DNA of 64,000 nucleotides, from positions 248,001 through 312,000 of IMG/VR virus record IMGVR_UViG_3300032245_001746. The stretch is one strand, 5' to 3'. This document shows, piece by piece, positions 13,086 through 32,896 of the stretch (the stretch's first letter is position 1; each line of letters opens with the position of its first letter). The position numbers were made by a program, and so were the translations under genes. The notes under the pieces are model-generated. The model was given only the letters and a program-made list of their open reading frames with translations, did no database searches and was not told where the DNA came from.

Positions 13086-13409
13086 TGAAATTACTGCAAA
13101 TTACTTAATAAAAAATTTTGTAACAATTTTTTTGTAATACCCCCATGTTAATTTTAACTCATTTACCTATTACAGATTATGTTATAATTAATCATTAAAC
13201 AATTTTGTAACAATTAATAATTAAATTTGAGTTGAAAACCCTACAAAATAAAAAACAATTTTTAATTGAAAATAAAATGACCGGGTGATAGCTGGTAAGA
13301 GGGGTATGCCCTACCAAACTTTTTTAAAGTTTTTTCAAATTAATTTCTTTATTTTTAATTTTGCAACAATTTATTGTACAATCAAACTTCCTGTTAAGAA
13401 AATGTTAAG

Positions 13410-13437
13410 AAAGGACTGGCACCATTTCCAGTCCTTT
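13410..13437 (-). terminator. Intrinsic terminator-like hairpin at the left end of the array
   Basis: AAAGGACTGG/CCAGTCCTTT inverted repeat after ORF 13460. Confidence 0.6.
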
Positions 13438-14610
13438 CAAACTTCGTCAACCACCTAGATCAACAACGTTTGGCAAGTTTGATGTCGACCTCGTTCGTTC
13501 GAACCCAATGATCGTAGATCTCATTACCAGCCAGTTCGATGATCAGGTCTCGCGTCTTGCCATACAATCCCTGAGAGCTTGCATCGTATGACACGAGCCA
13601 TTCTTCTGCGGGTTCAGGAGAGTCGGCAGTGTTGCATACTGCAATCAATCCGAAAAGTTGAATGATTCTTCTTGCATAATCATTCAATTCGGTCTCACCA
13701 TCACGATAAACAACGAGAACAGAAGGCTTTGACATTGTTATTCCTTTGACAAGAAGTGTTTGACTTACAACAGGATATTGTACAATCAAACTAGGATGTC
13801 CCAGGTCTCACAAAGCGAATCAATTGCTTCGTTAATGGTCAGAACCATTGTCAACCAGTCATCGAAATCGAGAAGTCTTCCGACCAGAGTCTCAGCCTCC
13901 GAATAAAGCTGAGACTCTGCGAATTTCAACTGATCCACTAACTGAACAGCCGTATCGTATTCAGTACAGCGTTCTGCTTCGAACAGAACAGAGATCAGAT
14001 GTGTTATCTCGTTTTTGATTGATGCTATCATTTGTTTTCTCCTGATAGCATCAGATTGTACAATCAAACTGGAATGCTGTTGTACTCTTCAACGGCAAGT
14101 GAAAACGACGTGAATCGTTTTGGTTCCTCGTCATTGTGTTGCACCACATAATTGACGTGATCAAGTCGAGACTTATCGCAATAGTAGGGCTTCACAACAA
14201 CAACCAGGGATTTTTTCCCAATTCCAGAAACCGCACAGGATGCGATTGTTGTTGAGACTTCTTGATCCTTCGTGCTTTCCAGATCGATTTCGTGTTTTCT
14301 CATTGTTTTCTCCAAGTTTGTGGCTGACAACGAGATATTGTACAATCAAACTTGATGGTTCTACTTGGAAAAATAGAACCCAAACAAGCACACAACCGCA
14401 ATTCCAAATGAAATGATCATTGCAGATCGAATCAGGAAAATCATTCCTTCGCCGCCAAAATGATTTGGGTTGGTTTCTTTATGCATTTTGACAGCGAGAG
14501 CCATCAAAAACAAGTTAAAGATGAAAATGAAGACGTAGATCACTTGTTTTCTCCTGTTGTTTGTTTCTCGTATCGTTGTATTGTACAATCAAACTTGTTG
14601 ATTTGTGAAT

Positions 14611-14645
14611 AAAAAAACGGGGATAATTTAATTATCCCCGTTTTA
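14611..14645 (-). terminator. Intrinsic terminator
   Basis: ACGGGGATAAT/ATTATCCCCGT stem with T-run. Confidence 0.85.
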
Positions 14646-14726
14646 CAACACGACTACGTATGGAACATTTATGTCAGCTTAAAGCTGCGTTTTGTTTTTG
14701 GGTCCAATCGAGTCGGGTGTTGTATC
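14644..14726 (-). ncRNA. Putative ~83-nt sRNA, copy 1
   Basis: Between element 14732 and a terminator; no ORF; terminal pairing ACAACAC/GTGTTGT, CGACT/AGTCG, TGGA/TCCA; near-identical copy at 18216-18298. Confidence 0.7.
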
Positions 14727-15779
14727 GTTGAATTGTACAATCAAACTTCAATCGATTTTGAATTCTGATCCGTCTGGAAGTTCAACTTTTGTGACATTTG
14801 GAATAAGTCCTTGTTCGCGACTGTCAAACAGTGCGGAACGCAGATCTTGTTCGTTTGGATTTGGCCAATGAATTGAGTTTGCTCCCTCAGTATGAGAGAT
14901 CAAAATACAAACTCCATCGTCTTCGTAATGAGCCTTCATCAATTCGTCGACGATATCGTCTTCAGAAGTGTAAAGTGTTCCGTCGATTGCAATTAATCGC
15001 ACCATTGATCGTTTCCTTTGAGGTTGACGTGTTTTGTATCAATGGATTGTACAATCAAACTTCAGTCAACAATCCAGACAATTTTGCCAGTGCCTTTAAC
15101 AAAAGCAACCTCTTTGCCATCCTGTTTCACACATACGGGGCATCCGTCCATGCTATTTTCGGCGGTTCGAAGTCCGTCCTGAACGCATTTTTCAACAGCT
15201 TTACGATCAGGCAGATTATTCGTTGGATGTGTGGTTCCGTTGTAATGCACTGAATACATTGCGTTTTCCCCTGGATTACCTGTGATTGTTCTGAGAGGGG
15301 ATTGTACAATCAAACTTCAATCCCAACTTACAAGGTCCCAGCGAACCTCACCTGTATCTCGCAGGATTTCGAGCATTTGAATTGCTTGCAATGGAGTGGC
15401 TTGTTCTACTTTTCCACACATGTATCCATTAAATTCTGGATAAACGACACGTTCAGATTGTCTTACAGGCACACCCGTGAAGTCGGCAAACAAATCAGGA
15501 CTTATGAAATGTTCGTATTGCGGTTTGCAGACGGTTCGAATATGTCCAGCAATACAACGTTCAAGACTCCACATGTCAAATGAGTCTTCATTAACATTCT
15601 TCAAAATGTCAATGGCTTTTTGCACATTTGGATAGATCATTTGCTCATTCCGTTTTGTTTGGGGCTGATATCGATATCGGTTCATTGTACAATCAAAATT
15701 CATTGATTAAGTACAAGAGAAAACGGCAAAGATGGCGTACATCCCTACCGTTTTTCAGTTCTAAAGTTTGGGAGCTTGA

Positions 15780-15851
15780 TCAAACTGAAGAACGATTTCG
15801 ATTTCGAATTTTTCGCAGGACGATTCCTGTCAGCAGGAACAATGAAATCAT
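15780..15851 (-). CDS. 23-aa hydrophobic/cationic peptide MISLFLLTGIVLRKIRNRNRSSV
   Basis: Own element (15890), GGAG RBS, ATG, then terminator at 15721-15755. Confidence 0.5.
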   Translation of the reverse strand: MISLFLLTGIVLRKIRNRNRSSV

Positions 15852-16374
15852 TTGTTTACTCCGTTCGGGTGAAGGGCTGATACGGTTACATTGTACAATC
15901 AAACTTAATTAATTAAGTATAAGAAAAAACGAATGAGGTTCTTACTCTCATTCGTTTTTTCTTTTTTTCATAGAGGAGACTATGCGGCGTAGATTAGTCT
16001 CTCAGCACTCTTATTTCCCTGCAACATTTGGGTTGACCATCACCAAAATTAGGTCTTGTTGTTTAAGTACAACAAGCAAAACTAATTATTTTGTAGTACA
16101 TCAACTCATTGTACAATCAAACTTCAACCGCCAATACTCCAATGAGATGGCTTTGTTGGTTTTTGAATGGTCACATATCGTCTTCCATCAACAATTCTGA
16201 TGGTTTTGACACTTCCATCTGGCAATCTCACCGTTCCAGATCCATTCGAACAACGAGTTTGTGTGTCATGTCTGTCATGTGTGTCGTAATAGCCACCATA
16301 TAGGTTTTTGCTCATGTTTGTTTCCTTCTGACATCGTCATATTGTACAATCAAACTTCATTGATTAAGTATAAG

Positions 16375-16404
16375 AAAAAACAGGAATGTTTCATTCCTGT
16401 TTTT
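16375..16404 (-). terminator. Intrinsic terminator
   Basis: AAACAGGAATG/CATTCCTGTTT stem with T-run. Confidence 0.85.
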
Positions 16405-16509
16405 AGCGATTTTTGGATAAAATTAGTGTTTTACTCGTTACTTATACAGTAGTATATACTAACGTGGTATACCTTTGTATAAGAACATCGCCAAACGCTC
16501 TACACTAAT
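16405..16509 (-). ncRNA. Pseudoknotted RNA motif, copy 1
   Basis: AUUAGUGU-AGAGCGUUU-GGCGAU-hairpin-CGAGUAAA-ACACUAAU-A-rich-AUCGCU; homologs at 32811 and 33386. Confidence 0.75.
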
Positions 16510-16553
16510 CCAGCTTTATCAATACCCTAAAGCTGGAAATCGGGATAAATTAG

Positions 16554-16626
16554 TGGTGCCGGTGGGAATCGAACCCACGACCATCGGATTAAAAGTCCGG
16601 TGCTCTACCAACTGAGCTACGACACC
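16554..16626 (-). tRNA. tRNA-Lys(UUU)
   Basis: GGTGTCG/CGGCACC acceptor stem, TAGCTCAGTTGGTAGAGC D arm, CTTTTAA anticodon loop, GTTCGATTC T loop; CCA not encoded. Confidence 0.95.
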
Positions 16627-16652
16627 AATACTGTCAGATTGTACAATCAAAC

Positions 16653-16892
16653 TTACCAGCCGTAATCGGATGGATCGAAACAAGACATGTCTGGATCTGT
16701 ATCTAGTTCCAGATCTAAATCCTCATCCAGATATTCATCCAAATAGCTGTCATTACAGCAACCACATGGACAATACTGATCATATTCCAGATAGGAAAAA
16801 TACAGATCTTCCAATTCGAGTTCTTCACGAACTTGTTCTTCTCTTTCGAGACGTTGTTCTTCGTTGAATTTTGCTACCAGGTTTTTTGACAT
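16653..16892 (-). CDS. Very acidic small protein with CPCGCC
   Basis: True start likely ATG after AGGAGA RBS (MSKNLV...); D/E-rich C-terminal half. Confidence 0.7.
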   Translation of the reverse strand: MSKNLVAKFNEEQRLEREEQVREELELEDLYFSYLEYDQYCPCGCCNDSYLDEYLDEDLDLELDTDPDMSCFDPSDYGW

Positions 16893-17233
16893 TGTTGTTC
16901 TCCTGAAGCAGGATTGTACAATCAAACTAAATCATAGCAGCATTTCGAGCCGCACATTTTCGTGCATAGTGCAATGATGGAGAATCACGTTTCAGTACAA
17001 TTAAACCCTTTTTCTGAGTTTCATACATCCAGGTAACGCAGATTGCCTGGTTGACTTCTCCATTCTGATTTTCAATTTCCACTTCAGTTTCGCCAACAGG
17101 AATTTCTTCCTGTTCTTTCATGGTGGGAATGTCGTATCCCATGAAATCATTGGCTAACGCATGGAAATAAATCCATGATACTGTGTTTTTTGGAAACGCA
17201 TCGTAATGAAACAATCGCATTTGATTTGATCCT

Positions 17234-17297
17234 ATAGGTGGATATTACAGCAAGGTGTTTCACCTTTGTGTCTTATTTTGCTGTAATATCCACCTAT
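17234..17297 (-). promoter_or_regulatory. 20-bp perfect inverted repeat forming the 5' leader of ORF 16927-17220
   Basis: ATAGGTGGATATTACAGCAA ... TTGCTGTAATATCCACCTAT between element 17304 and the RBS. Confidence 0.75.
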
Positions 17298-17905
17298 CAT
17301 CAGATTGTACAATCAAACTAAGTGGTATCCCAATTTTCTTTCCAGAAAAGTGGCCAGGATTCTTCTGAATACCACGCTTCCCCCCACGATGGAGAGTCGT
17401 TTTCGTTGACTTCTTTCACTTTATCAGGATATTTTTCACATGCCTGATCAAATGAAATTGATGTTTCATAAACGGCATCGTGCCATTTCATGGTTTGATG
17501 ATCGATTTTGTTTCCAGGCAGAACCTTAGAACCGTTCGGAAAATAATATCCTCCCGGCTTGACTTCTGTCATTGCATCAGTCAATTCCTTTTCAGGATAA
17601 CTACCTTGAGGCACAAGCAGAATTTTCATTGTGTATTCCTTGTGAAGTGATAAATCTCAATTGTACAATCAAACTTCATCGATCGGACTGATCTGGACCG
17701 TTTCCATATGGACCAACATATTTTGTTGATTCTGGTTTAGAAACGGGATCTGTCAAAGCTACACCGTTGCCGTATGGACCAACGTAATCAGATTTTTTCT
17801 TTTCGTCAACCTGAACGTCGATTTTAATTGTGATTGTCATGATTGTTCTCTTTGAGATTGTGATATCACTACATTGTACAATCAAACTTCATTGATTAAG
17901 TACGA

Positions 17906-17940
17906 CAAAAAATGCATGGATTTATTTCCATGCATTTTTT
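17906..17940 (-). terminator. Intrinsic terminator
   Basis: AAATGCATGGA/TCCATGCATTT with T-runs. Confidence 0.85.
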
Positions 17941-18183
17941 GTTTTTCAATATAGGAGAAGAAATCAGATTTCAGGGGGAGCACGATTATTAATCATGGAT
18001 GTGTCCAATATTGGATCGGGCTGCGGCGAATATTAGAGATGAAAAGAAAGAAATTTATGTTTTAGGTCATGTCCTCATGGTAGTTTCTCCTTGACTAGTG
18101 GTTTTTGTTTTAGTTAAGTTTAACTTTTCTAACGTTCGTTGCATCGCAACATTGTACAATCAAACTTCATTGATTAAGTACAT

Positions 18184-18215
18184 AAAAAAACAGAGATAAA
18201 TTAATATCTCTGTTT
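18184..18215 (-). terminator. Intrinsic terminator
   Basis: AAACAGAGATA/TATCTCTGTTT. Confidence 0.85.
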
Positions 18216-18298
18216 TACAACACGACTACGTATGGAACATTTATGTCAGCTTATTTGCTGGTATTGTTTTTGGGTCCAATCGAGTCGGGTGTTGTATC
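18216..18298 (-). ncRNA. Putative ~83-nt sRNA, copy 2
   Basis: Near-identical to 14644-14726; differences fall in the loop and small hairpin. Confidence 0.7.
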
Positions 18299-18626
18299 AA
18301 TGGATTGTACAATCAAACTCACTTCGTGAAGCTCAAAAGTGAAGCTACAAATCCAACAAAACACCACAAAATCAACCAAATATGAGCCAATTTGATTGAA
18401 ATTGGCAGTTTTTCTTTTTCTACCCAATGACCAATTGAGATGAAAATCACGAGAGAAGTCACCAACATTGCAAAAATAGCTTGGAATGTTGTCATGTTTG
18501 TTTCCTTGTTTGATTTTTGATTCACTTCGATATCGGTTCATTGTACAATCAAACTTTTTATTGTTTTAACAAAAAAAACAGGGATATTTCTATCCCTGTT
18601 TAATCGATTCTCTGAGATTTCTCAGA

Positions 18627-19037
18627 TTATGCAGCTTCTGCCGTTGTCGTCGGTTCCAGAACAACAGTTTCGACGGTTTCTTCTGCCGTTTCCGTTGTTT
18701 CGAGGACAACAGTTTCAGTTTCTTCGTCCGTTGGCAGTTCGACGTTCAGGTGTTCGCAGATCAGTTCGAGCATATCTGCGTTCTTGTCCGTCTTCGCGTC
18801 AACAATCGTGTCGATCAGAGAGGTAACAATTGTTCCCTTGAGGAACTGGAGAAGATAGTAACAGGCGAGTTCTGCGTCAGAACCCTGTTCCAGTGTCGCC
18901 ATGAACTTGGCAAATACTTTTGCCATTGTCTTGTCGATTGTGCCGCCCTGTGAGTTCTTATTCTTAGAACCCTTCGGGCGTCCACGTCCACGCTTAGGAG
19001 CTTCGACGTTTACAGTTGTTTCGGCTGAATTTCCCAC
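18627..19037 (-). CDS. AT-hook protein with acidic tail, paralog 1
   Basis: KRGRGRPKGSKNK AT-hook; E/T-rich C-terminus; terminator at 18571-18601. Confidence 0.75.
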   Translation of the reverse strand: MGNSAETTVNVEAPKRGRGRPKGSKNKNSQGGTIDKTMAKVFAKFMATLEQGSDAELACYYLLQFLKGTIVTSLIDTIVDAKTDKNADMLELICEHLNVELPTDEETETVVLETTETAEETVETVVLEPTTTAEAA

Positions 19038-19111
19038 GGCAGTAACCCTTTCAGAATTGTTTTTGACTTGTCAACACCGTTGTTGACATCGTCATATTGT
19101 ACAATCAAACT

Positions 19112-19190
19112 TCAAAGCCCTTCTCAACTTAGAGAAGGAAGTTTGACCTGACTCTTCCGAGTCATCTTTGAGTCATCCTTATGAGGAATC
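19112..19190 (-). ncRNA. Two-hairpin non-coding cassette upstream of the AT-hook gene, copy 1
   Basis: GACTC/GAGTC and CCTTCTC/GAGAAGG stems between elements 19191 and 19096; homolog at 34086-34154. Confidence 0.5.
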
Positions 19191-19262
19191 ATTGTACAAT
19201 CAAACTTAATTGATTTAAGGAATAAAAAAAGCAGAGATGTATTATCTCTGCTTTATAATAAA

Positions 19263-19336
19263 TGTCCCCATCAGGGATCGAACCTGAAACCTACTGCTTA
19301 GAAGGCAGTTGCTCTATCCAATTGAGCTACGAGGAC
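19263..19336 (-). tRNA. tRNA-Arg(UCU)
   Basis: GTCCTCG acceptor, ACTGC-CTTCTAA-GCAGT anticodon arm, GTTCGATCC T loop. Confidence 0.93.
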
Positions 19337-21195
19337 AAAAGAAACAGACCGATTCAGCATTTCACTATCAATCAGGTGATACGCCCTTACTGGAACTGAT
19401 ATCCAATATTGAATATCAAAAGACGTTTTAAAGTGAAATTTTTTATTAATCCAGTTTATCAGAATTGCTCAGTCTGTTTCTAACTTCAAATTGTACAATC
19501 AAACTATGCTGCGAGTCCAATTCGTTGATTCAATGAATTGAAGACACTTTCAACAAGTTGCTGTCCTGGAATCGGAAGATATTGCAACGTGAGAAGTCCA
19601 TCGGTTTCAAGATCAAAAACAGACCCTACGTCTTCCATTTTGAATTCATAGGATTTCTGATTTGTGCATCTGACATAAAGTTCAACTCCTTTTTCAAAGG
19701 AAAGAAGTTTTGAACTTGTAGAATCATTTGTCAACAGAACGAAAAAAAACATGTTTGTTTCCTTGTGTTGTTTGAACCGACATCAACACATTGTACAATC
19801 AAACATCACCAGCCGAATTCGATTTTTGACCGAACTTCATCAGACAATCCAGCTACAAAAACGGTCAAAGAAAAATCTTTGATCAATTTTCTGTAAACTT
19901 TGACACAATCAACAAAAGTTTTACAATCAATGTGAAAATCACGGAAATTGTCATTGTAGCCAAAAACATAGAATTCTGTTTTTGGTTTTGGTCTGGATTC
20001 GACACAGCCGCATTTTTCGCCATCAACACACAATGCGTCCAAAAATCCTTTTTTTGCACGCCGATGTGCTTGCCACCATAGTGGACTTTTGTACTTTGGT
20101 GAAAAAACATCACCACAACTTTCACAAACAACATTGTACAGTGGAAGGTTCATCAGTGTTCTCCTTGATGACGAATCATTGTACAATCAAACTTTTTTGA
20201 TTTAATCAATAAAAAAGGAGGGTTTCCCCTCCTAGTAGTTTTAAATTGTAGAACGCTGTTTGCTAGAGTCCGAATTGATCCAGCAATTCTTCCAGACGAC
20301 GCAATTCTCGTCGGTTCAAGCGATATCCAACAGACTTCAATCCGATAAGTCGGTCGAGTTCTTCCATTTTTCTTTTTTCCAGAAGGGAGTGAAACAAATT
20401 GAACAACGTCACATTGTACAATCAAACTTCTTCAGTTGAAACAACTGTAAATGAGTTGTCAACATATTGATTGTCTGAATTGTCTGGAATTTCAATGTCT
20501 TCAATGAGATCTTCTACAGTCTCACCGTCCTGGACAGTCAATTCGGTTTCAAATTTCACCGAATATGTGACACGAATTTTCTTTGGCATTTTTGTTTTCC
20601 TGAGATTCACTAGATCAGAGATATGAGTACATTGTACAATCAAAAACCAGAAAACGCATCGTAGTATTTACTGAATGGTTGAGTTGTAGCAATTTCTTCA
20701 AGATTTTCGTTGGAAATCCAGCGAGAAAACGTTGAGTCGATATCGGTTGTGAATCTGATTAAACTGCGATCTTCATCGCGATAAATCAAAACTCCCACAT
20801 GATTTAACAAAGTTTCCTGATCTTCCACTTCTTCTTTTTTCATATTGTCATCAAAATCAAAAACTGGTGCTTTTTTGATTTTGACATAAACAACATTATT
20901 TTTTGGCATGAAAGATCTCCGATAAGTAGAGATAGATATTAAGACACAAAGCCCGCATTTTGTTTTGTTATTAGGTACATTACATGTGTCTTAACACTTA
21001 TCCCTCGATATGAGTACATTGTACAATCAAACTTTATTGATTAAGTATAAATAAAAAACGTGAATCGTCTGGTAACGATTCACGTTTTAATTTTAATTTT
21101 ATTTAAAAATCTGAATACGCTCACATAATTCATTTTTGGTTGATTAGTCCAAAAATTGCTTTAGGAAGTCCAACCCTACTTAGACTCCTGCTAAA

Positions 21196-21363
21196 TTATG
21201 TGAGCCACCTGGGCAGTGATATAGAACACCAACGGTACTTGGCGAATTCCCGTTGGGTCTTGCTGTATTTTTCAACAGCTTCTTGAGATTCAAAATTAAG
21301 AAAGGGTTTTTCTTCAATGAATCCTACAACCACTGCCAGGATGATGAAAACCATCCTGAACAT
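21196..21363 (-). CDS. 55-aa membrane-anchored peptide (not in ORF track), paralog 1
   Basis: MFRMVFIILAVVVGFIEEKPFLNFESQEAVEKYSKTQREFAKYRWCSISLPRWLT; AAGGAG RBS; homolog at 39014-39184. Confidence 0.7.
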   Translation of the reverse strand: MFRMVFIILAVVVGFIEEKPFLNFESQEAVEKYSKTQREFAKYRWCSISLPRWLT

Positions 21364-21669
21364 TTCTTTTTCTCCTTGATTGAGATATCAGAGAATTGTA
21401 CAATCAATCTTCGATAACGCCCGTACTGAATGTGTAAACGTTATCGGCATCTTCGTCATTGTAGATCTCAAATTCATTTTCAAGAGATTCAATCTCTTCA
21501 GTATTCAACGGACGTTGAAATTGATTTTCAGCCAATTCTTTCAAGCGAATTTTTGCTTCATCCCAAGATGAAACCGCTGTACAAGCACCCAATGAATTGT
21601 TGTGAATTACACAAACAAACAACATTTCTTTTTCTCCTTGATTGAGATATCAGAGAATTGTACAATCAA
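21359..21669 (-). repeat. Identical ~49-bp leader (element+RBS+ATG) at 21359-21407 and 21621-21669
   Basis: AACATTTCTTTTTCTCCTTGATTGAGATATCAGAGAATTGTACAATCAA twice, ahead of unrelated genes. Confidence 0.9.
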
Positions 21670-23316
21670 ACTCAGAGTTCTTCCAATCCAAGACAATCAA
21701 CAAAAGCCTTGACCAAATCACCATGAACACCACAATGAAGAACCTTGCCATCTGGATTGGTAAGATCAAATCCGTCACCATCGAGACATGGAAGAATGGA
21801 AAGAACGTGATTTTCCTGTCGATCGTAAATCCGAACAACATTGTTCTGAGGAATAACCTCAGTTGCGATATCAAATCGCTCATTAGAATCAGCAGCAGAT
21901 TCCAGACGGTCCTGAACAGAATTGGAATTACACATTTTTTTGTTCCTTTGAGTTGTGTGTTGTTCCGATATCGGAAGATTGTACAATCAAACTTCTTCAA
22001 GTGGCATTTCTCGTCCATATTGTTTAACATAATTAAACATATGAACATTAAAAATCATAGATGGATCAAATGGTGTTTCATTCCATTTTATGATTTTGTA
22101 GTTTGATCTAACAGGACGATAAATACCAAGATCAATCCAACGTGATGTATCTCGATTTTCGATATTTGCTGAAATCCAATTTCCAACCACAACTCCATCC
22201 ACCGCTACGAAAAAGCAATTTGGATTTATTGTGCTTTCAAGATATTGAATTTTCATTTCGTCTCGGTAATAGAGTTTCTGCCACTGGCATTGAAACAGAA
22301 TCAATTCCTTCGCCCAATGTTCCAATAGTAAACAATTTGATTCCAGTTGGAGACATTACATCCCAATCACGACGATTGTCTGAGTTTTTCAGACAAATCA
22401 GCCCGCTGCGTTTTTCAAAACGCCGAATTGAATCTGGTTTTTGTATTGGTTTTTTCCCGGAAAATTTAGATAGCAAGTAAGTTCGGATCATTGTCTCTCC
22501 AGTGTTGTTCCGATATCGAAGGATTGTACAATCAAACTTTATCAATTGATTTTGAAGAACGCAATACGATACGTTTCAATCAAAATCAAAGATACAAATC
22601 CAGAAAGCACAACCATTGAAAGAGATTTAAAGTTGACTTCTGGATTCATTACCATGTTGTTAAAGAAAACTACAATCATGCCAATGAAAAAACTCATCAG
22701 AATTTGAAGAAATCGCAAAAATCGACTCATGATTTTTTATGTTCCTGCATTGAAGGAATTGTACAATCAAACTTCCCAAGAGCACTCTGTTTCATGAAAT
22801 TGATTCAGGCATTCTCTTGAACAAAAAGATGGATCATCAGCAAATTCTGATTTAATCCTACCATCAAGAATATGTTTTCCACAAATATGACAACAAAACA
22901 TTTCTTTCAAATGATCAAGAATTGCTTGTTCAAGATTAGCAAAATGAGAAATCAGATTGCAAGTTTCAATTCCGCCACCAGAAAAGCAACTGGAAGCTAT
23001 TTCTTCAGCTTGTTTTTCAAGAGTATTGTGTCTTTTTACTTTTGACAAAGTCAATTGAAATTGTACAAAAGTATCAAGCAAAGCTCTAGCTTGAATATCG
23101 TTCATGTTGTTCTCCTAAGAGGAGATTGTACAATCAAACTTCAATTAACTGAAATCCATTTTCTCCAACCAATCAATGAAAACAACCAGAGCCAAGCTGA
23201 AAGCAAGAATGATTGGAAATCCAAGACAAATCAGATAATATGCAAATCCAACCCATACTGTGGAATATGCCAAAAGAGCTTTTTTCATTGTTTTCTCCTG
23301 AAACAGGATTGTACAA

Positions 23317-23691
23317 TCAAACTTCATCAATTGATTTCAAATGATCATTAAATTGTTGCATGAGTGAACGAATGTTCTCTCTTCCAACTGTATTTGCTGA
23401 ATGAACATAGAAATCAAAAGGTTTTGTGATATTTTTAACAATCCAATTGGCAACATCTTTGCCGGTTTTTGAGTTTTCACCAAGATCATGATCAAAAAAG
23501 ATAAGATCATATACATTTGACGAAAGATATGCAATTGCTTCGTCATAATTGCGAGCAATATGAACGTTTCGTCGATTTGCAGCAATGTATCTTCTTTGAT
23601 CTTCATTGAAATTGGGAAGCATTGCCTTTTCGCGATATCGAAAAGAACAAACATAACTAAAATCACGTTCATCATCAATGAAAAGAATCAT
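23317..23691 (-). CDS. Cyclic-phosphate-processing receiver-like domain protein
   Basis: LFIDDER, FFDHDLG, TGKDVANWI, VHSANTVGRENI. Confidence 0.75.
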   Translation of the reverse strand: MILFIDDERDFSYVCSFRYREKAMLPNFNEDQRRYIAANRRNVHIARNYDEAIAYLSSNVYDLIFFDHDLGENSKTGKDVANWIVKNITKPFDFYVHSANTVGRENIRSLMQQFNDHLKSIDEV

Positions 23692-23920
23692 TGTTAGCTT
23701 CCAAATTTAAGAAGATTAAGTAGAAATTGATTCAATGAATTCTTGTTCGAATTCTTTGAATGACAATTCATGAACAAAAACAATTGTGCCTTTATCGATA
23801 GGCACAATTTCATATTTAGTTTTTATTCTTTGAATCAAATTCACATAATCTTCTTCGTGATCATAAATCGCAACAACGACAACATTGCTTCGAATTAACA
23901 TGGTTTTTATCCAAAAATAA

Positions 23921-24006
23921 TGTCGGAGACGGGAATCGAACCCGTACGCCCCTTCCAGGACCCAGGATTTTAAGTCCTGTGCGTCTGCCTATTTCGCCAC
24001 TCCGAC
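23921..24006 (-). tRNA. tRNA-Leu(UAA)
   Basis: GTCGGAG/CTCCGAC acceptor, CAGGA-CTTAAAA-TCCTG, long variable arm, GTTCGATTC. Confidence 0.95.
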
Positions 24007-24332
24007 GCATTTAATCATTGTACAATCAAACTTCAGGGTTTGTTAATGGCCAAACAGAATATAACCATCTCAAACCCATTACATCAAATGCATCATCAAG
24101 TGATTTTCGAATTTTGTCAACATGCATAAAGGCTTCAGCCTCATTGAAAAATGGACCGTAAATTTGATGCACTCCATAGGGCTTTTCGACATAAATGATA
24201 AGAGTGTATTGCATGATCAGTCCATTTTGTTTGTTGACTTCTGACATCGTCACATTGTACAATCAAACTTCATTGATTAAGTGTAATAAAAAACAGGGAT
24301 GTTTCCACCCCTGTTTCTCAGATCAATTGCCC

Positions 24333-24536
24333 TTAACCATTATGATCAAAATCGAACTCAAATTCGTATTCGTCTTCAGACAAAAAGCAATCGAATTCTT
24401 CTTGAAGAATTTCATCAAAAAGAAGAATTTCTTCAATGTAATCATCAAGAAGAAGTTCGTCAAACAATTCGATTTCTTCTTCTCGATCTTCTTCAGTTGC
24501 TTCGAAGAAGTCGGGCAATGTGCTGGTACGAATCAT
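24333..24536 (-). CDS. Extremely acidic small protein (DNA-mimic candidate)
   Basis: MIRTSTLPDFFEATEEDREEEIELFDELLLDDYIEE...; start after AAGGA RBS; terminator downstream. Confidence 0.65.
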   Translation of the reverse strand: MIRTSTLPDFFEATEEDREEEIELFDELLLDDYIEEILLFDEILQEEFDCFLSEDEYEFEFDFDHNG

Positions 24537-27391
24537 TGGAAATTCCTTGAAGTTTTGATTGAATTGAACCAACATCAGTCAATTGTACAATCAAACTAAT
24601 GTGGCACCTTCCGGAATTTGCCATTTTTCATTTTCTGATGGTTTTGGCTTAAACCATGTTGATTCAATAGCATCAGAAGATGATTTTGCCATTGAACAAA
24701 TGGCATTTAATTGCCACATTGCTTCTTTCAAATCATTCCGAGCAGACAAAAATAATCGAATCAATGTCTCAACATTATCTCGATTCGATACAATTTCATC
24801 AATAATGTGTTCAGGTACTTCATCACATTTCTCTGCTTCATCAAGCAGAGATAAAATGTTTTGATTTGACACTTTTACTCTCCAGGTGGATACTTAGGAT
24901 CAGGGGCGGGTAAATGTTCTGATGATTTTTCTTTTTTTGGCCAATCATTTTTGGCATATCCGATATGTTGAGCCTGACCGCTTTGAATATCGGTAATGTC
25001 AATGATGTTTGACCATGTTCCTGAAATGTGTTTTCTTTCAAAACCAAATTCTTCAGCGTAATGATCAAGAATCTGGTTTAATGAAAGAAACTCGATTCTA
25101 TGGACAACAAGGACTGTAAATACCTGATTGTCATAAAATACTACAATGCCATTTTCCATTGAATTCTCTCATTGGAGACAGATTGTACAATCAAACTCTT
25201 ACCACCAGAAAACGATTTTGTGTGGAATCTTTTTTGTGGGAAGAATGATTTCAAATTTATCGTATCGAACACGAAACAATTCAACCTCAAAATCCATACT
25301 TACAGGATTTACAGGCAAATTTAATGGAGATTCCGTGTTTTTAGCTTTGTATCTTACTAATACTCCACGGGGTCCACTGGAGACAGATTCGACTTGATCA
25401 ATACAATTTTGATCAAATGATCTTCTGAAAGCATCAAGTTTGTCAAAATCTTCTGATGTTTTTGCAATAATGCTGATTTTTTCAAAACTCATGTGCAACT
25501 CAGCCTTTTAATTGAGAATCGCCAATTACTGTCAATCCATTTTGATTTTTTGAGGGTTTCCATTTCGGATTGAAAAACGCCATTTTGCGCCAGCCCAAGA
25601 AACCACCCAACCTGATTCTGAAATCACTTTACGATTTTCATCGTAAATTTTACCTCCAATCAAATGTTGTTCCACATAAAGAAAACCCTCTGGATCACAT
25701 TTTTCATGAAAATTTTCAAGTTGCTTTGCGATTTTTGATAATTGAGATGAAATCTCAAGTTTTAGTTCAGCAAGTTTTCTTGCTTCAACCAAAGTGGTAT
25801 AATCATTTGCTTGTGGAAATTTGTTCATTTGTTAGGCTTTCGACAACAAGAGATTGTACAATCAAACATTCTTTTCGTCTTGAGGCAAACCCCATGCTCT
25901 TTCAATATCAAATTCGTCAAATTGCCAGAGTTCTTCTGGAGAATGTTGCTTTAACAATTGATGATTAGCAAAATGACGGTTTTTGATACTAATTGCTGCT
26001 CTCAAACCATTTTTCAAGCCTTGCAAATAGGCTTTTTGCCGTTCTTCTTCAATCAATTCAAGAATTGTTTTGTTTTGATTGACAGATTCTTCAAATGGTG
26101 GTGAAAATCTTGCATCATTCAAATCGAAAAGTCGTGCATTTACAATACTTCCATCATGATTTGCAACATGAAATCCATTTTGCTTTTCGAAAGTATCAAC
26201 AATACGACCCGAACTAATCAGTTTTCTGAACATCGTTTTCCCCTTACCAGTTTGAGTTTGATCCGAACACTGATCAATTGTACAATCAAACTGTAAATCC
26301 TGCAAATCTCATCAGATAGATAAATTTACGTTTGATTTTAATCCATAAATAATTCAGATTAGATCTGAAATTATTTCTTTGGACCACAGAGAAAGGACTT
26401 AATTGAGTTAACACATTTGTTCTCAAGTTAACAGCCCAAAATCGTCCTAGATTTTGAAATGCATCTCTTGATGATGGAATGTAAAACACTTCACCAACAG
26501 AAAGTTGGTTAAGCGTGAAATCAAATCCATGCTTTTTACTGTTTTTTGTGAAAACTTCATTCAATTTTTGAAGGCTGTTTGATTTCATCTTGAAATTCCA
26601 TGAATTGGAAGGTGTTTGTACACAAACATTGTACAATCAAACTTTATTTTCGTTCGATTTCTACACAATAAATTATCGAACTTCCAGAAGATCCTTGTTC
26701 AGAAAACAACCAACCTGCTTTTTCCAACTTTACTTCATTAGCCACATGAAGTTTTTCTTTCAAATAGATCGTCATTCTTGCATTTTCATCTGCTTTGATA
26801 TAAAAATCTTTCAAATGAAGAGCAATTTCAGCCAATTGTTCTTCTTCATTTTTCCTTGTCCGGTTCATGAACCAATTGAATTGTTCATTCGATGACGGAA
26901 TATTCACCGATTTTTTCATTGTTCGTTGCTCAGAAGTTGTAGAACTTGTTTTCCTGACCATTTTGTTTTCCTTCAAACAGAAACCGCAGTTTCTGTAGCA
27001 TGTGCAACATAAATTGTTGAATTTGGATCTTTTGGATCTTTTGGAAACTGGAAACTCATGCCAACTTTAGTGGTTTTTGGATAAAAACCAAACTTGGTCT
27101 GAAACTTTTCCGGAGAAAGAGCACAAACTGGAATTCCATTTTCCAATACAACGATAGCAACTTCGCCTGACATCGTAAGAACCATGACGATTTTCCTTTG
27201 ATTTTTTTTGGAAGCTAACCGATGTTGATCAATTGTACAATCAAACTAAAAAAGACAGATTTCCACGTTGCCCTTCGAAAGATAATTATCTTGATTAGTT
27301 ACCAATCAAAATAATTATCTTTTCTTCTCACAGCTTCCGTTTCTTTTTAAAGTCGGTCGCATCTCTGCTTCTATCCAACTTCTGTCTTTTT

Positions 27392-27880
27392 TTAGATCAT
27401 ATTTGCACCAAATTCAGGATATTCAGTACCTCTCATTTCTGAAGGACCGCCATCATATTTTGTGTGATGTGGATTTTTCAACAAATGAAATGCAAAATTC
27501 CACAACCAATTTCGTTGAAGTTTTGACATTCTTTCATGAAAAGAATGGAATCTTGCATAAATGATTCTTTGTGCTTTTTCTTTCAATTCAGCACATTGAA
27601 CCAACTGAATGTCAAAATGCGTTTTGCCAACAAATTTTCTTAACACACAAACAACTTGTTGGTCAACATATGTTGCTGGTGCAGCAATGGTTGAATAACC
27701 ATTTGACAGTAAATCCGAATGTGTTTTTTCTGTGAATTCGACAAAAAAGTCGTAATCATTTGGGTTTTTACTTCCAAAGTATCTTGACCCAGTCAGATAA
27801 AACAAGACGTTCATCTTATCCAATTCAGCTAATTCAGCTTTAATTGGATCGCACTCAGCAATTGAGCTTCCACGAATCAT
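27392..27880 (-). CDS. Pol-beta superfamily nucleotidyltransferase
   Basis: LTGSRYFG...NDYDFF and a downstream DIQL acidic residue. Confidence 0.7.
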   Translation of the reverse strand: MIRGSSIAECDPIKAELAELDKMNVLFYLTGSRYFGSKNPNDYDFFVEFTEKTHSDLLSNGYSTIAAPATYVDQQVVCVLRKFVGKTHFDIQLVQCAELKEKAQRIIYARFHSFHERMSKLQRNWLWNFAFHLLKNPHHTKYDGGPSEMRGTEYPEFGANMI

Positions 27881-28059
27881 CTGAAATTTCCTTGTTTTTT
27901 CGCTTTGAATCTCTCGACATCAACACATTGTACAATCAAACTCTGTGAAACCAATCTTTGATTTTCCAATAACCCGAATGTAAACAAACAAACGGAACGA
28001 AAATCAAGAAGAAATAAAAAACCCAACCAGCATGTTTCAAACTTTTAATCATAAACCCT

Positions 28060-28635
28060 CTATTCATAGATTGAAAAGATTGCATTATATGCCTTCATTT
28101 CATAGGCAAGTGCATCACTTTCCACCAGAGAATCATTTCCTTCGTTGTAGATCAGAAAAGAAAGTGTATATTTAATGAATTTTGTGTAATTCTGTCTGCT
28201 ATGACGATATTCATGTGCTAATGTAACAGCAATGATACCATCAGATTCAGAAAAAACAGATTTGTTAACATACAACTTTTTGCTGATAAAGTCGTATTTT
28301 GCAAAATACCCCTTATCGTCATTGGTAAATACCAATTCCTTGTTTTCAATCTTTTCCTTAATCCAAATTGCAATTTTTGGATTAACCTCTTCCAAAATTT
28401 GGATAGCATTTTGGAGAGATTCCAGTCTTACCGAATCTGGAGTATTGGTGAAAATACTGTATTTGTTTGAAACAATGTGTGGATCAATGTTAATCAAACT
28501 TTTGAAGTCATCAATTTCTGAGTCTTTTTTGCAATCAAAAAGAATGAAAGCCAAAAGACTCAGACAAATTGTTGCCAACACACTTTTCTTGCAAAAAAAT
28601 TCAAACATGATTGTTCTCTTCATAAGAGTTTTCAC
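28060..28635 (-). CDS. Zincin-like metallopeptidase with N-terminal signal/anchor
   Basis: LAHEYRH (HExxH) and downstream ESDA; hydrophobic N-terminus. Confidence 0.65.
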   Translation of the reverse strand: MKTLMKRTIMFEFFCKKSVLATICLSLLAFILFDCKKDSEIDDFKSLINIDPHIVSNKYSIFTNTPDSVRLESLQNAIQILEEVNPKIAIWIKEKIENKELVFTNDDKGYFAKYDFISKKLYVNKSVFSESDGIIAVTLAHEYRHSRQNYTKFIKYTLSFLIYNEGNDSLVESDALAYEMKAYNAIFSIYE

Positions 28636-30386
28636 CTTGATTCATATGAAGAGATTGTACAATCAAACTTTAGTTTGTCAAAATTGACTGAATTTCAGGT
28701 GCAAACAAATTGGCATTAGTTTCTGGCAAAGTCTCAACAATATGTTTGACAAGCATTGTTTTTGCTTCTGTCAACATAAGAGACAAATATTCTTGTGTAG
28801 CCAGAAAAGAAAAATCGTCTGCAAATCTGTTGAGAAATGCCTGTTTCAGAATTAACGATGGAAGCTGATCAGCAATAATGTGTGCAATATTAATCACCAA
28901 AATAGGTGAAATAAGCGTGAATTTTGATGATCTTGACCAACTCCAAGTAGCAACACGACTGTTCATTCTTGGATTTTTAGTATCCAACATTTCAGTGAAT
29001 TGATCACATTTTTCATCTCTTGAAATGACAATATATTCAGTTTTCAGAGTGTTTTCTCCATTATCATGTTGTAAACGCTGTGTTGGAAAAAAATACTTTG
29101 AAGTAATTGGTTTCAATGTAAGAAACTCTGAAAGCGTCATGTTTTTATTCCTAAAAGAGTTAGTAAAGACACATTGTACAATCAAACTGAATCAAATTCT
29201 AAGATTTGTTTGACTCAATAATATCCTGCATTTTTTTGTTGTAAATATCAACTAATTGTTGATATTCTGTGTTGAAACAATGTTGATTAATTGCGGACGG
29301 CATGTTGACCAACACAACCGCCAAACAAATAATAACAATTATTCCATAGATGTGTGTGAACATGGTTGGTGATCCAAATCAATCGCAGTCAAAATTTTAT
29401 TCAAGTGAATCCCACAAGAATTGACATATGGTAACACAAAAACTGTGCCAGATTCACAATTCAATAACTCTTCTTGCAATTGACTATACCAATTCAGAGT
29501 TCTGAATTTATGATCTTCTTTAGAAGCTGATTCCAATTCATCCAAAGCTTCCAACAAATTCAGTTCTTTTGAAATTGAAAGATTTTCATCTATCAAAATG
29601 AAAAAACGCTTTGTCATGTGAAATCATTTCTTGAAAAAAAAGAATAAAAAACAGTGGTTCGGAATCGTTTTGTTTTTTACCTAATGTCAATATTATTTTA
29701 GACTCAGGTGATTCGTTCCACTGTTTTTAGTTTTTCAACGAATAGTTCTCTGAAGAAAAGTCAAATCAAGTTGATTTCTTTCATTCAATCCAACTGCACG
29801 AATCAAATCAATTGTTTGAAAACACAACTTGACCGCTTTGAACACTTCCCAAGGATTCATACAATTATTCAAAATTTCAACCAACGCATCAGTACGTGGA
29901 AGAATCATTCCCATACACACAACAGTTTCACCTGTTTCATCAATAACCATTTTGATCGCATGATTTCCTGGAAGCTTTTCAATTCCAATCATCGTTCCAA
30001 AAATGACATTGTTGTCAGAATCAATGTGAATAATCTGCACTTGAATTACCTTTTGTTGAAAGAATTGTTAGTTCGATGTGAAGGAATTGTACAAGCAAAC
30101 TCAAAACAAGTTTGTGTAAAAATACTTTGCCAAATTTACACCAGCATATCCCAACACTGAACAAAGGAACACAATTACAATCGTTGCAATTACGAAAGCA
30201 ATTCGATCTTGAATCCAATAATTCTTTGGTTTTTCAAGAAAGATTCTTACCTTATCAGTTAAAGTAAAAAATGAAGCTGCAATTAACATTCCAATTACAG
30301 CATAAAAGAAAATTGAAGTAATCGTGGTCAACATGAAAATCTCCTGAGTTTTGTAAACTAACATACACTCATTGTACAATCAAACT

Positions 30387-30692
30387 TCAATCCAGTCTAA
30401 TTGTATTTCCTTTTAAAAATCCACTTGTTACCGCACCAGTAACAATATGTCCACTTGGTGATTTTGCCTTGAAACCAGTAGAAAATGTATCGCTTTTTGA
30501 TTTCATCCAAGGACGCCAACCAGTAATTTCAATTTCAGTGTAACCCTGTTCAGATAATACTCTTTTTGTATTATCAGGATCAATTGCACCACCATTTGCA
30601 ATCAAAATAACAAAAAAGAGTATTATCCCACAAAAGATCATTTCAATCAAACTAATTCTTTTCATTTCACTTTTCCTTTTAAAAACAGACAA
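30387..30692 (-). CDS. Conserved phage membrane-anchored protein
   Basis: TM segment then LSEQGYTEIEITG...DTFSTGFKA...GAVTSG, a pattern common in myophages. Confidence 0.55.
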   Translation of the reverse strand: MSVFKRKSEMKRISLIEMIFCGIILFFVILIANGGAIDPDNTKRVLSEQGYTEIEITGWRPWMKSKSDTFSTGFKAKSPSGHIVTGAVTSGFLKGNTIRLD

Positions 30693-30698
30693 TCAGAG

Positions 30699-31109: not shown

Positions 31110-31168
31110 GTTGTATCCTTGTTATTAAGAGTTGGAGTGGAATCAATTATTCCACACGTTAATGCTAT

Positions 31169-31330
31169 TTATTCTAAAGTGCGACTCAAAAATGAATGAA
31201 TAACTACATTTCCACTTTTTCGTGTTTCATAGCAATTCAAACATTCAAATAATCCAACACTACATGTTCGAATTAACGTACCAGCCCTTCCATTTCCTGC
31301 CTTGCAGGTTTCACACTGATTAAATGTCAT
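31169..31330 (-). CDS. 53-aa CxxC...CxxC zinc-finger-like protein (not in ORF track)
   Basis: MTFNQCETCKAGNGRAG...ECLNCYETRK...; ATGA overlap with the upstream stop. Confidence 0.55.
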   Translation of the reverse strand: MTFNQCETCKAGNGRAGTLIRTCSVGLFECLNCYETRKSGNVVIHSFLSRTLE

Positions 31331-32810: not shown

Positions 32811-32896
32811 AGCGATTTTTTAATAATTAGTGTTTTACTCGTCATTAACTAGAAAGTTAATTCTAATTAATACACCGCCAAACGCTCCACACTAAT
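32811..32896 (-). ncRNA. Pseudoknotted RNA motif, copy 2
   Basis: Same conserved core; followed directly by terminator 32780-32810. Confidence 0.75.

What the first reader, a model, noticed from the sequence alone, without database searches (positions are those of the whole stretch)
16554..24032. The element looks like an unusual promoter: TACAAT -10 with a fixed AGTTTGATTG extension and no -35
Seen: tRNA-Lys (5' end 16626), tRNA-Leu (24006) and both sRNA copies begin about 5-11 nt after TACAAT, the spacing expected after a -10 box. Sequence upstream of the 16-mer is whatever gene precedes it, so no -35 is conserved. Promoters in the left 13 kb are ordinary TGGTATAAT types. Inference: recognition by a phage-encoded or alternative host sigma factor or activator. 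The palindromic core could also be an operator for one regulator controlling all cassettes.
Basis: partly seen in the sequence, partly recalled or inferred. Interest (0 to 1): 0.7.

Follow-up and report, generated by a model that had tools for sequence, protein, structure and literature searches.

The report
Repeated huge-phage promoter lacking a -35
A 16-base sequence repeated about 80 times, always pointing the same way in front of small genes, tRNAs and small RNAs of an uncultivated huge phage, is almost certainly a phage-specific transcription start signal without the usual -35 box; which protein reads it is unknown.

Summary
AGTTTGATTGTACAAT occurs 78 times (66 exact) on the minus strand of a 57-kb array: 75 copies in the window and 3 beyond it. 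One further copy lies on the plus strand elsewhere. All 79 point at the gene downstream.

The contig is 320 kb, a T4-related huge phage from wastewater. No -35 is conserved. Strong intrinsic terminators sit 20-25 nt upstream of at least nine copies. Three tRNAs start 10-11 nt after TACAAT. A pyrimidine-purine step 8-9 nt after TACAAT occurs in 68/78 copies, and Shine-Dalgarno sites and RNA helices begin there.

A distant 595-kb relative has a sister motif (AGCTGTAC, more than 100 copies). Leaderless start codons there sit 11-12 nt after the C, which is the same inferred start point.

So this is a promoter class with a conserved TGTAC core and a lineage-specific upstream extension. It is distinct from a TATATAA late-like class. 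No phage RNA polymerase was found, so host core polymerase is implied.

The specificity factor is unresolved: host sigma with or without a delivered factor, or a divergent phage sigma of about 330 aa seen in relatives. The repeats also mark cassette-shuffling breakpoints, as PeSLs do in T4-type phages. No direct start-site data could be obtained.

The parts
13373..62608 (-). Array of 75 copies of the 16-mer AGTTTGATTGTACAAT in the window, all on the minus strand. Three more lie beyond the window end. Spacing is 95-700 bp up to about w30000 and wider beyond.
   Evidence: Copies inside the finding's range have low coordinates 16638, 16913, 17304, 17660, 17873, 18151, 18304, 18540, 19096, 19191, 19490, 19790, 20178, 20413, 20631, 21018, 21395, 21657, 21978, 22523, 22758, 23125, 23308 and 24017.
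16638..16653 (-). Promoter copy in front of tRNA-Lys(UUU). The inferred start is at 16629, giving a 3-nt leader.
   Evidence: The tRNA 5' end is at 16626. T/A fall at motif positions 23/24.
16553..16626 (-). tRNA-Lys(UUU), transcribed from the copy at 16638.
24017..24032 (-). Promoter copy in front of tRNA-Leu(UAA). The inferred start is at 24008, giving a 2-nt leader.
23921..24006 (-). tRNA-Leu(UAA), transcribed from the copy at 24017.
18304..18319 (-). Promoter copy in front of sRNA copy 2.
18180..18295 (-). sRNA copy 2, about 116 nt. Its closing helix starts at the inferred +1 and it ends in an intrinsic terminator.
   Evidence: MFE -35, z -7.35; terminator 18216-18187.
14732..14747 (-). 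Promoter copy in front of sRNA copy 1.
14607..14723 (-). sRNA copy 1, about 117 nt. It has the same fold as copy 2 and a terminator at 14644-14614.
   Evidence: MFE -39.8, z -6.8. It is nearly identical in the relative L156.
19490..19505 (-). Promoter copy in front of a structured 144-nt leader followed by tRNA-Arg(UCU).
19338..19481 (-). Structured leader RNA. Its outer helix runs from the inferred +1 to the base before the tRNA-Arg 5' end.
   Evidence: first paired base is motif position 24.
16376..16404 (-). Intrinsic terminator followed by the spacer TACTTAATCAATGA and the promoter copy at 16341. This is an example of the composite terminator-promoter cassette.
   Evidence: Similar terminators lie at 14614-14644, 15921-15963, 18187-18216, 18576-18601, 19228-19254, 20216-20233, 21055-21088 and 32784-32810.
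23308..23323 (-). Promoter copy with the shortest type of leader. The AGGAG of the next gene begins exactly at the inferred +1 (23299).
   Evidence: The same holds at 23125, 16913, 37422 and 52362.
21018..21033 (-). Promoter copy preceded by a terminator (21088-21055) and followed by a structured leader of about 108 nt, before the ORF at 20640-20909.

Best explanation
The 16-mer is a phage-specific promoter. Each copy starts a short transcription unit: one or a few small ORFs, a tRNA or a small RNA.

Transcription most likely begins at the purine 9 nt downstream of TACAAT. That is motif position 24, 12 nt after the C of the TGTAC core.

The enzyme is most likely the host's multisubunit RNA polymerase, because no phage polymerase is detectable here or in a 595-kb relative. 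The A/T-rich part (TACAAT) would serve as the melting or -10-like element. The invariant upstream decamer AGTTTGATTG (about -24 to -15) would replace the -35 as the specificity determinant.

Who reads that decamer is inferred, not shown. I consider it slightly more likely that the class is early, read by host holoenzyme and possibly helped by a virion-delivered factor. The alternative is that it is read by the divergent phage sigma of about 330 aa seen in relatives, whose own gene sits behind such a promoter.

The repeats have two secondary effects. They supply stop codons for upstream genes, and they act as homology patches at which gene cassettes are exchanged between related phages.
For: Shown directly:
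- There are 78 minus-strand copies and 1 plus-strand copy, all pointing the same way as the next gene. The only plus-strand copy lies in a divergent intergenic region 33 nt before a plus-strand gene block.
- No -35 is conserved.
- Terminator-like sites are enriched, 41 against 10.8 expected. Strong ones lie 20-25 nt upstream of at least 9 copies, so a new start is needed there.
- Start codons lie a median of 40 nt after TACAAT.
- Three tRNAs begin at motif position 26-27, so the start must be at or before position 26.
- The pyrimidine/purine step at positions 23/24 occurs in 68/78 copies. The next best position has 42. It occurs in 49/51 copies of a related contig.
- Shine-Dalgarno sites pile up at position 24 as a lower bound.
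- The closing helices of two sRNAs, the tRNA-Arg leader and other leaders begin at position 23-26.

Comparative evidence:
- The identical 16-mer occurs in at least 5 other contigs whose proteins are only 30-70% identical.
- In a 92%-identical relative the 16-mers are invariant, while the 8-15 nt after them are the most divergent stretch.
- The 595-kb relative LR756511.1 (portal 50% identical) has arrays of AGCTGTAC, 57 on the plus strand and 77 on the minus strand, with the same anatomy. There, SD-less start codons sit exactly 11-12 nt after the C (16 cases), then none until 26 nt or more.

Other:
- No RNAP beta or beta' domain, DFDGD motif or T7-type polymerase was found in either genome.
- A separate TATATAA class lies before large structural ORFs in both genomes. 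TTGACA-N16-TAAGAT sites occur in the relative.
Against: - No transcription start has been measured. The only RNA libraries that hold relatives are kept as assembled contigs, unstranded and without read ends.
- With a start at position 24, TACAAT lies at -14 to -9, two bases further than the canonical -12 to -7.
- The relative's hexamer (TACTAA or TACAAA) lacks the T that sigma70-type factors need at -7. Reading TACAAT as a true -10 may therefore be partly coincidental.
- Short inverted repeats starting at motif position 14-16 are in excess: 47 sites against 34 +/- 3.6. If they act at RNA 5' ends, they would point to an earlier start.
- No reader protein is identified.
- The contig is only about 63% complete and the host is unknown.
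Confidence: 0.68

Rival explanations
1. The promoter is read by a phage-encoded sigma that amplifies its own synthesis. The candidate is the divergent sigma70-family protein of about 320-335 aa (regions 2-3) found in relatives. Its regions 2 and 3 would read the TGTAC/A-T part and the upstream decamer, making a -35 unnecessary.
For: - The relatives G001 and LR756511.1 each encode such a protein. A profile of the two hits only sigma factors in the PDB, over regions 2-3 (E 2e-4).
- The two proteins are only 23% identical, and the upstream part of the motif also differs between these lineages.
- By contrast, the well-conserved small sigma goes with the well-conserved TATATAA motif.
- A promoter made only of a -10-like element and an extension suits recognition by sigma regions 2 and 3.
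Against: - The gene was not found in this 320-kb contig.
- In G001 the gene lies in a divergent intergenic region. The 16-mer is the only promoter candidate there, which creates a bootstrapping problem unless the protein is packaged or the host gives basal transcription.
- The co-variation argument rests on two lineages only.
Confidence: 0.3
2. These are ordinary strong early promoters read by the host primary sigma alone. The 16-nt identity is kept by recent duplication and gene conversion between cassettes, not by a dedicated reader.
For: - TACAAT keeps the key A and T of a -10 hexamer.
- The cassettes are clearly duplicated and exchanged.
- PeSL promoters of T4-type phages are host sigma70 promoters (PMC2839356).
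Against: - The identical 16-mer persists in phages whose proteins are 30-70% identical.
- There is no -35, and the TG is not in extended -10 register.
- The relative's version lacks the -7 T, yet that same relative carries canonical TTGACA-N16-TAAGAT sites.
Confidence: 0.2
3. The promoter belongs to an unrecognised phage RNA polymerase, either single-subunit or virion-packaged. The conserved block would then run up to the start site, as in T7-type promoters.
For: - Near-invariant 16-17 nt promoters are typical of phage-encoded polymerases.
- Hairpins begin at position 14-16 in 38 sites.
- Several large ORFs have no family assignment.
Against: - No T7-type, beta/beta' or DFDGD signature was found here or in the 595-kb relative.
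- Position 16 is G in only 38/78 copies.
- The pyrimidine-purine step, the SD lower bound and the leaderless ATGs all point to a start 8-9 nt later.
- The 1661-aa ORF looks like a tail fibre.
Confidence: 0.08
4. The motif is an RNA-level signal, such as an endonuclease processing site or a translational signal in long polycistronic transcripts, and not a DNA promoter.
For: It is intergenic, in the same orientation as the genes, and overlaps stop codons. All of this would also fit a processing site.
Against: - Canonical terminators lie directly upstream of at least 9 copies.
- The plus-strand copy and the G001 sigma-gene copy sit in divergent intergenic regions with no upstream same-strand transcript.
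- The start-site-like pyrimidine-purine step and the leaderless ATGs at fixed distance are not expected for a cleavage site.
Confidence: 0.05
5. The palindrome ATTGTACAAT is additionally, or instead, an operator for one dimeric regulator that switches the whole array off or on together.
For: - It is a perfect 10-bp palindrome overlapping the melting region.
- TGTACA cores are used by known dimeric regulators, for example YefM-YoeB operators (PMC1802561, found).
- 28 bits of conservation exceed what a polymerase contact usually needs.
Against: - The relative's motif AGCTGTAC(T/A)AA is not palindromic in the same way.
- The sequence that would complete a longer palindrome (CAAACT) is not conserved downstream.
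- No candidate regulator has been identified.
Confidence: 0.15

Closest known systems
PeSL (promoter-early stem-loop) cassettes of T4-type phages (Arbiol et al. 2010, PMC2839356; Comeau et al. 2014, PMC4122927)
   Same: - Both are composite units in the order upstream stop codon, stem-loop terminator, promoter, SD, start codon.
- Both are repeated tens of times in front of ORFans in plastic regions of T4-related myoviruses.
- In both, differences between related phages have their breakpoints at the repeats (paper section read).
   Different: - PeSL promoters match the host sigma70 consensus with both -35 and -10. Here there is no -35.
- Here the conserved block is a 16-nt invariant -10-proximal element.
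- Only a minority of copies here carry the terminator.
- The array is one 57-kb unidirectional block with raised G+C.
T4 late promoters read by the phage sigma gp55 (TATAAATA, no -35). This rests on established knowledge of T4.
   Same: - The promoter consists of one conserved block near -10 without a -35.
That logic may apply here.
- The phage has a small sigma of gp55-like size.
   Different: - The motif differs and lies before small early-type genes, tRNAs and sRNAs, not structural genes.
- A separate TATATAA class sits before structural genes.
- The small sigma is only weakly comparable to gp55.
Extended -10 (TGn) promoters of bacteria
   Same: They work without a -35 because of contacts just upstream of the -10 hexamer.
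   Different: - Here TG abuts the hexamer (TTGTACAAT) instead of TGnTATAAT.
- Conservation extends 10 nt upstream.
- The inferred start is 9 nt after the hexamer.
Promoters of jumbo-phage multisubunit polymerases (AR9, phiKZ; PMC5312081, PMC7598289) and of T7-type polymerases
   Same: They are short, highly conserved, -35-less promoter blocks repeated before early genes of large phages.
   Different: Those systems need phage-encoded polymerases. None is detectable here or in the 595-kb relative.

Membership tests
Bacterial sigma70-type (housekeeping) promoter | A -35 hexamer (TTGACA-like) lies 16-18 bp upstream of the -10. | tested here: not met
   Information content is below 0.13 bit at all positions -45 to -4 relative to the motif.
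Bacterial sigma70-type (housekeeping) promoter | A -10 hexamer TAnnnT lies with its 3' end 5-8 nt before the start site. | tested here: inconclusive
   TACAAT fits TAnnnT. However, the inferred start is the 9th nt after it, and the relative has TACTAA or TACAAA. No measured start exists.
Extended -10 promoter | TG lies at -15/-14, one base before the hexamer (TGnTATAAT). | tested here: not met
   The sequence is TTG directly followed by TACAAT in all copies.
PeSL cassettes of T4-type phages | A promoter combined with a stem-loop terminator, between the upstream stop codon and the downstream SD and start codon. | tested here: met
   At least 9 strong terminators lie 20-25 nt upstream. The stop codon lies inside or next to the motif in 50 of 78 copies, and SD plus ATG follow a median of 40 nt downstream. 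Most copies lack the stem-loop.
PeSL cassettes of T4-type phages | The promoter part matches the host sigma70 consensus, including the -35. | tested here: not met
PeSL cassettes of T4-type phages | Insertions, deletions and replacements between related phages have their breakpoints at the repeats. | tested here: met
   Joints lie at motif copies in contigs of relatives. Homology to L156 begins at a motif. Cassette order is mosaic in G005:C241.
T4 late (gp55) promoters | TATAAATA near -10, in front of late structural genes, read by gp55. | tested here: not met
   The motif is different and lies before small ORFs, tRNAs and sRNAs. TATATAA-type sites lie before structural ORFs instead.
T4 middle promoters (MotA/AsiA) | A MotA box centred at -30, plus MotA and AsiA genes. 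| tested here: not met
   Nothing is conserved near -30. There are no MotCF or AsiA matches, though the contig is incomplete.
Promoters of phage-encoded RNA polymerases (T7-type, phiKZ/AR9-type) | The genome encodes the cognate polymerase. | tested here: not met
   No Rpb2_6, Rpb1_5 or DFDGD motif was found in this contig, no DFDGD motif in LR756511.1, and no T7-type polymerase above cut-off in either. The T7-type model rang in no control genome, so that single test is weak.
Integron attC-type cassette sites | A tyrosine integrase and long imperfect inverted repeats at cassette ends. | tested here: not met
   No Phage_integrase match. The repeat is 16 nt with only a 10-nt palindrome.

The most novel reading that the evidence does not exclude
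A lineage of T4-related huge phages uses a previously undescribed promoter family. It has a TGTAC core plus an A/T-rich stretch, a start 11-12 nt after the C, and no -35. Its lineage-specific upstream decamer co-evolves with a fast-evolving phage sigma of about 330 aa that has regions 2-3.

The same element would serve three purposes at once. It is the promoter and the upstream gene's stop codon. It is the homology patch for cassette exchange. Through hairpins that span the start site, it is also a gate that lets only promoter-initiated (not read-through) RNA expose its Shine-Dalgarno site.
Probability: 0.3. Interest if true: 0.65.

Novelty: new variant of a known kind. Interest (0 to 1): 0.55.

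Why it matters
Transcription programmes of uncultivated huge phages are essentially unknown. This work gives a sequence-defined promoter class with about 80 copies, a predicted start site to the nucleotide, a sister motif in a 595-kb relative, and two further putative promoter classes. Gene-expression timing in these phages could therefore be annotated from sequence.

It also offers a testable pairing of candidate phage sigma factors with promoters. A compact 16-nt element that works without a -35 could be a useful orthogonal expression part. Finally, it extends the PeSL idea, in which regulatory repeats drive cassette shuffling, beyond classical T4-type phages.

Tried and rejected
- **Start-site mapping from public RNA data.** Four wastewater metatranscriptome runs hold 90-95% relatives, but only as assembled contigs. 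No read ends or strand are available.
- **Host identification.**
  - The Glf look-alikes were uninformative.
  - The MAG carrying a motif-rich contig is a mixed bin with a Firmicute-like RpoB and a eukaryote- or giant-virus-like RPB2, so no host can be inferred.
- **Literature search for the motif.** Nothing relevant was found.
- **Rfam.** Only tRNAs were found.
- **Fixed-register hairpin after the motif.** There is no covariation at fixed positions, and only a modest excess of stability.
- **Co-variation test with relatives of the small sigma.** Only two 35-kb fragments without arrays were found.
- **Relatives through the 488-aa structural protein.** Only G001 was found.
- **Structure of the small sigma.** The model has pLDDT 61, too poor for a fold search.
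- **sigma54-type, ECF-type and Bacteroidetes-type promoter layouts.** I compared these by eye with the motif and rejected them, because the required GG/GC, AAC/CGT or TAnnTTTG elements are absent.
- **Complex prediction.** I did not use it. No candidate reader was specific enough for the result to mean anything.

Full report
**What the window is.** The window is bases 248001-312000 of a single 319,857-bp viral contig. It has 28% G+C and is classed as linear and about 63% complete.

The contig encodes GyrA, an intein-containing GyrB, an intein-containing PolIII alpha, a UvsX-like recombinase, a Dda-like helicase, a tail sheath and a T4 gp20-like portal. It is therefore a T4-related huge myovirus. 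Near-identical DNA is found in wastewater, river and activated-sludge data sets. The host is unknown.

**The observation.** AGTTTGATTGTACAAT occurs 66 times exactly and 12 more times with 1-2 mismatches. All of these are on the minus strand, between genome positions 261373 and 317651. That makes 75 copies in the window, from 13373 to 62608. The only other copy, with one mismatch, is on the plus strand at genome 94064. It is by far the most over-represented word in the genome.

A per-position profile shows 1.2-2.8 bit at all 16 positions. There is a weak tGA just upstream and nothing (below 0.13 bit) from -45 to -4. So there is no -35.

**Anatomy around the copies.**
- Upstream ORFs end in or beside the motif. 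In 23 of 50 clear cases the stop codon is the TGA inside it.
- A Shine-Dalgarno site and a start codon follow. The start codon lies a median of 40 nt after TACAAT, and within 15-59 nt in 55 of 66 cases.
- Terminator-like hairpins are enriched fourfold, 41 against 10.8 expected. Strong minus-strand terminators lie 20-25 nt upstream of at least nine copies, usually joined to the motif by the spacer TACTTAATCAATGA.
- Three tRNAs start 10-11 nt after TACAAT.
- Several units contain no ORF but a strongly folding RNA that ends in a terminator.
- The single plus-strand copy lies in a divergent intergenic region, 33 nt before a plus-strand gene block.

All 79 copies therefore point at what lies downstream. 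In several places the motif is the only possible source of transcription.

**Where transcription probably starts.** I number the first A of the motif as position 0, so TACAAT occupies positions 10-15. Five observations bear on the start.
- Position 23 is a pyrimidine in 70/78 copies and position 24 a purine in 75/78. The pyrimidine-purine step is present in 68/78 copies, against at most 42 at any other position. It is present in 49/51 copies of a related contig.
- The tRNA 5' ends at positions 26-27 require a start at or before position 26.
- In the genes with the shortest leaders, AGGAG or AAGGA begins exactly at position 24, and essentially never earlier.
- Folded from position 24, both sRNA copies and the 144-nt leader of tRNA-Arg have their closing helix starting at nucleotide 1 (z-scores -6.8, -7.4 and -3.9). 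In free folds from position 16, five of eight strongly structured units begin pairing at positions 23-26.
- All this is indirect. It converges on the purine 9 nt after TACAAT.

**Comparative evidence.** The identical 16-mer occurs in several other sequences:
- 13 times, all on one strand, in a 102-kb viral contig (G001) whose proteins are only 30-70% identical to this phage;
- in several metagenome contigs;
- 56 times in a 25.7-kb contig that was binned into a mixed MAG.

Against a 92%-identical relative (L156), the 16-mers are invariant. The 8-15 nt that follow them are the most divergent and indel-rich stretch.

The closest record with a full-length portal match (50% identity) is LR756511.1, an uncultured phage of 595 kb and 42% G+C. 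It lacks the 16-mer but has its own repeated word, AGCTGTAC.
- On the plus strand there are 57 copies, 55 of them within 0.7-19 kb.
- On the minus strand there are 77 copies, 49 of them within 19-101 kb.
- The copies lie after terminators and stop codons and before small ORFs, again without a -35.

The two motifs share TGTAC followed by A/T-rich sequence. They differ upstream (AGTTTGAT against tATAAAGC). The final T of TACAAT is A in the relative.

In that genome, start codons without any Shine-Dalgarno site sit exactly 11-12 nt after the C of TGTAC in 16 cases. Almost none follow until 26 nt or more. That is the signature of leaderless mRNAs. It places the start at the same relative position as inferred here.

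**Other promoter classes and the polymerase.** Outside the arrays, both genomes are enriched for (A/C)TATATA(A/T) within 80 nt upstream of start codons.
- In this genome there are 50 such sites against 14 expected.
- In the relative, TATATA occurs 40 times against 5.9 expected.
- The sites include those before large structural ORFs. This looks like a T4-late-type class.

The relative also has TTGACA-N16-(G)TAAGAT sites.

Neither genome shows an RNA polymerase of its own. Searches for Rpb2_6, Rpb1_5, the DFDGD motif and T7-type polymerase were all negative. The 1661-aa ORF looks like a tail fibre. Host core polymerase is therefore implied.

**Candidate readers.** This contig encodes one sigma-family protein. 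It is 174 aa and has region 2 only. It is well conserved in the 595-kb relative and is collinear with T4 gp55, although the match is not significant. I assign it tentatively to the equally conserved TATATAA class.

The relative encodes two more sigma-like proteins. One, of 333 aa, lies directly behind an AGCTGTAC site. G001 has its 23%-identical counterpart (320 aa) directly behind a 16-mer, in a divergent intergenic region. A profile of the two hits only sigma factors, over regions 2-3.

Either this sigma is an early product of the array, or it reads the array promoters including its own. The parallel divergence of this sigma and of the motif's upstream half favours the second. It was not found in the present contig. 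MotA and AsiA are absent.

**Cassette exchange.** Contigs of 90-95% relatives in RNA libraries align in pieces. Their ends and internal joints fall on motif copies, for example 16627>18148, 16934>21655, 18319>19096, 14719>15034 and 15065>16329. Homology with L156 starts at a motif, and the cassette order in the MAG contig is mosaic. No integrase is present.

This matches what was described for PeSL cassettes in T4-type phages (PMC2839356, read; PMC4122927). The promoter part here, however, is not a host-consensus promoter.

**Unexplained.** Short inverted repeats beginning at position 14-16 are more frequent than in shuffles: 47 sites against 34 +/- 3.6. In genes with short leaders they would pair the Shine-Dalgarno site in read-through RNA, but not in RNA started at position 24. 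That would resemble the known T4 lysozyme-gene arrangement. This is a reading, not a result.

The dense part of the array has 33-40% G+C against 26-28% elsewhere. The relative's dense array is likewise richer, 51% against 42%.

**Verdict.** The element is real and highly non-random, and it is best explained as a phage-specific -35-less promoter. Its start site is predicted but not measured. The class appears to be a new variant of known phage promoter and regulatory-cassette systems. Its reader is unresolved.

Noticed in passing
window 14607-14723 (-) and 18180-18295 (-): Two copies of an sRNA of about 117 nt with no ORF. They fold very stably (z -6.8 and -7.4), each between a 16-mer promoter and an intrinsic terminator. 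The sRNA is nearly identical in the relative L156. No Rfam family matches.
   Followed up: partly
window 15913-16099 (-): A non-coding unit of about 190 nt between the promoter copy at 16108 and the terminator at 15921-15963. It is about 99% conserved in L156, which is more than the neighbouring ORFs.
   Followed up: partly
window 19338-19481 (-): A structured 144-nt leader whose outer helix joins the inferred transcript start to the base before tRNA-Arg(UCU). It may be a processing or stability element for the tRNA.
   Followed up: partly
window 13000-30000 against the rest of the genome: The dense part of the array has 33-40% G+C against 26-28% in the rest of the phage. The relative LR756511.1 shows the same contrast, 51% against 42%.
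   Followed up: partly
genome-wide, for example genome 86628-89558, 141143-146128 and 209845-213171 (outside the window): A second putative promoter class, (A/C)TATATA(A/T), lies 20-40 nt before start codons of large structural ORFs. It is enriched in this phage and in the 42% G+C relative, and it resembles the T4 late TATAAATA.
   Followed up: partly
genome 121428-121952 (+), locus L015:1252-1776: A 174-aa sigma-family protein with region 2 only. It sits next to tail-tube-like genes, is of T4 gp55-like size, and is conserved in LR756511.1.
   Followed up: yes
L092:16468-17430 (G001) and L244:12574-13575 (LR756511.1): A fast-evolving sigma70-family protein of 320-333 aa with regions 2-3. In both relatives it is placed directly behind an array-type promoter. 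It was not found in this contig.
   Followed up: yes
window 4610-6781 (+); also genome 24232-27498, 33042-35528 and 60772-63108: LAGLIDADG inteins or homing-endonuclease domains lie inside a RecD-like helicase, GyrB, PolIII alpha and the UvsX-like recombinase.
   Followed up: no
window 40759-41862, 47344-47856, 58417-58974 and 62618-63400 (-): At least five paralogues of a DUF7666 protein lie inside the array. They are among the proteins best conserved with G001. The word TTATTTTGATCATA is repeated six times at 40838-42054 (+ strand) among the paralogues there.
   Followed up: no
genome 96434-96847 (+), locus L005:16434-16847: An SmpB-like ORF lies in the gene block downstream of the only plus-strand copy of the motif. 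G001 carries an array of 31 tRNA genes after its first motif copy.
   Followed up: no
genome 319758-319857 (contig end) and 220802-220971: The contig ends in an (AATC)n tandem repeat, which probably explains why the assembly stops inside the array. Six tandem 30-bp repeats with the core GGTGGTGGGTCCCATGTAAC lie at 220.8 kb.
   Followed up: no
window 16913-16928, 23125-23140 and 23308-23323, among others: Short inverted repeats start at the last bases of TACAAT and span the inferred start site. In genes with short leaders they would sequester AGGAG in read-through RNA only.
   Followed up: partly
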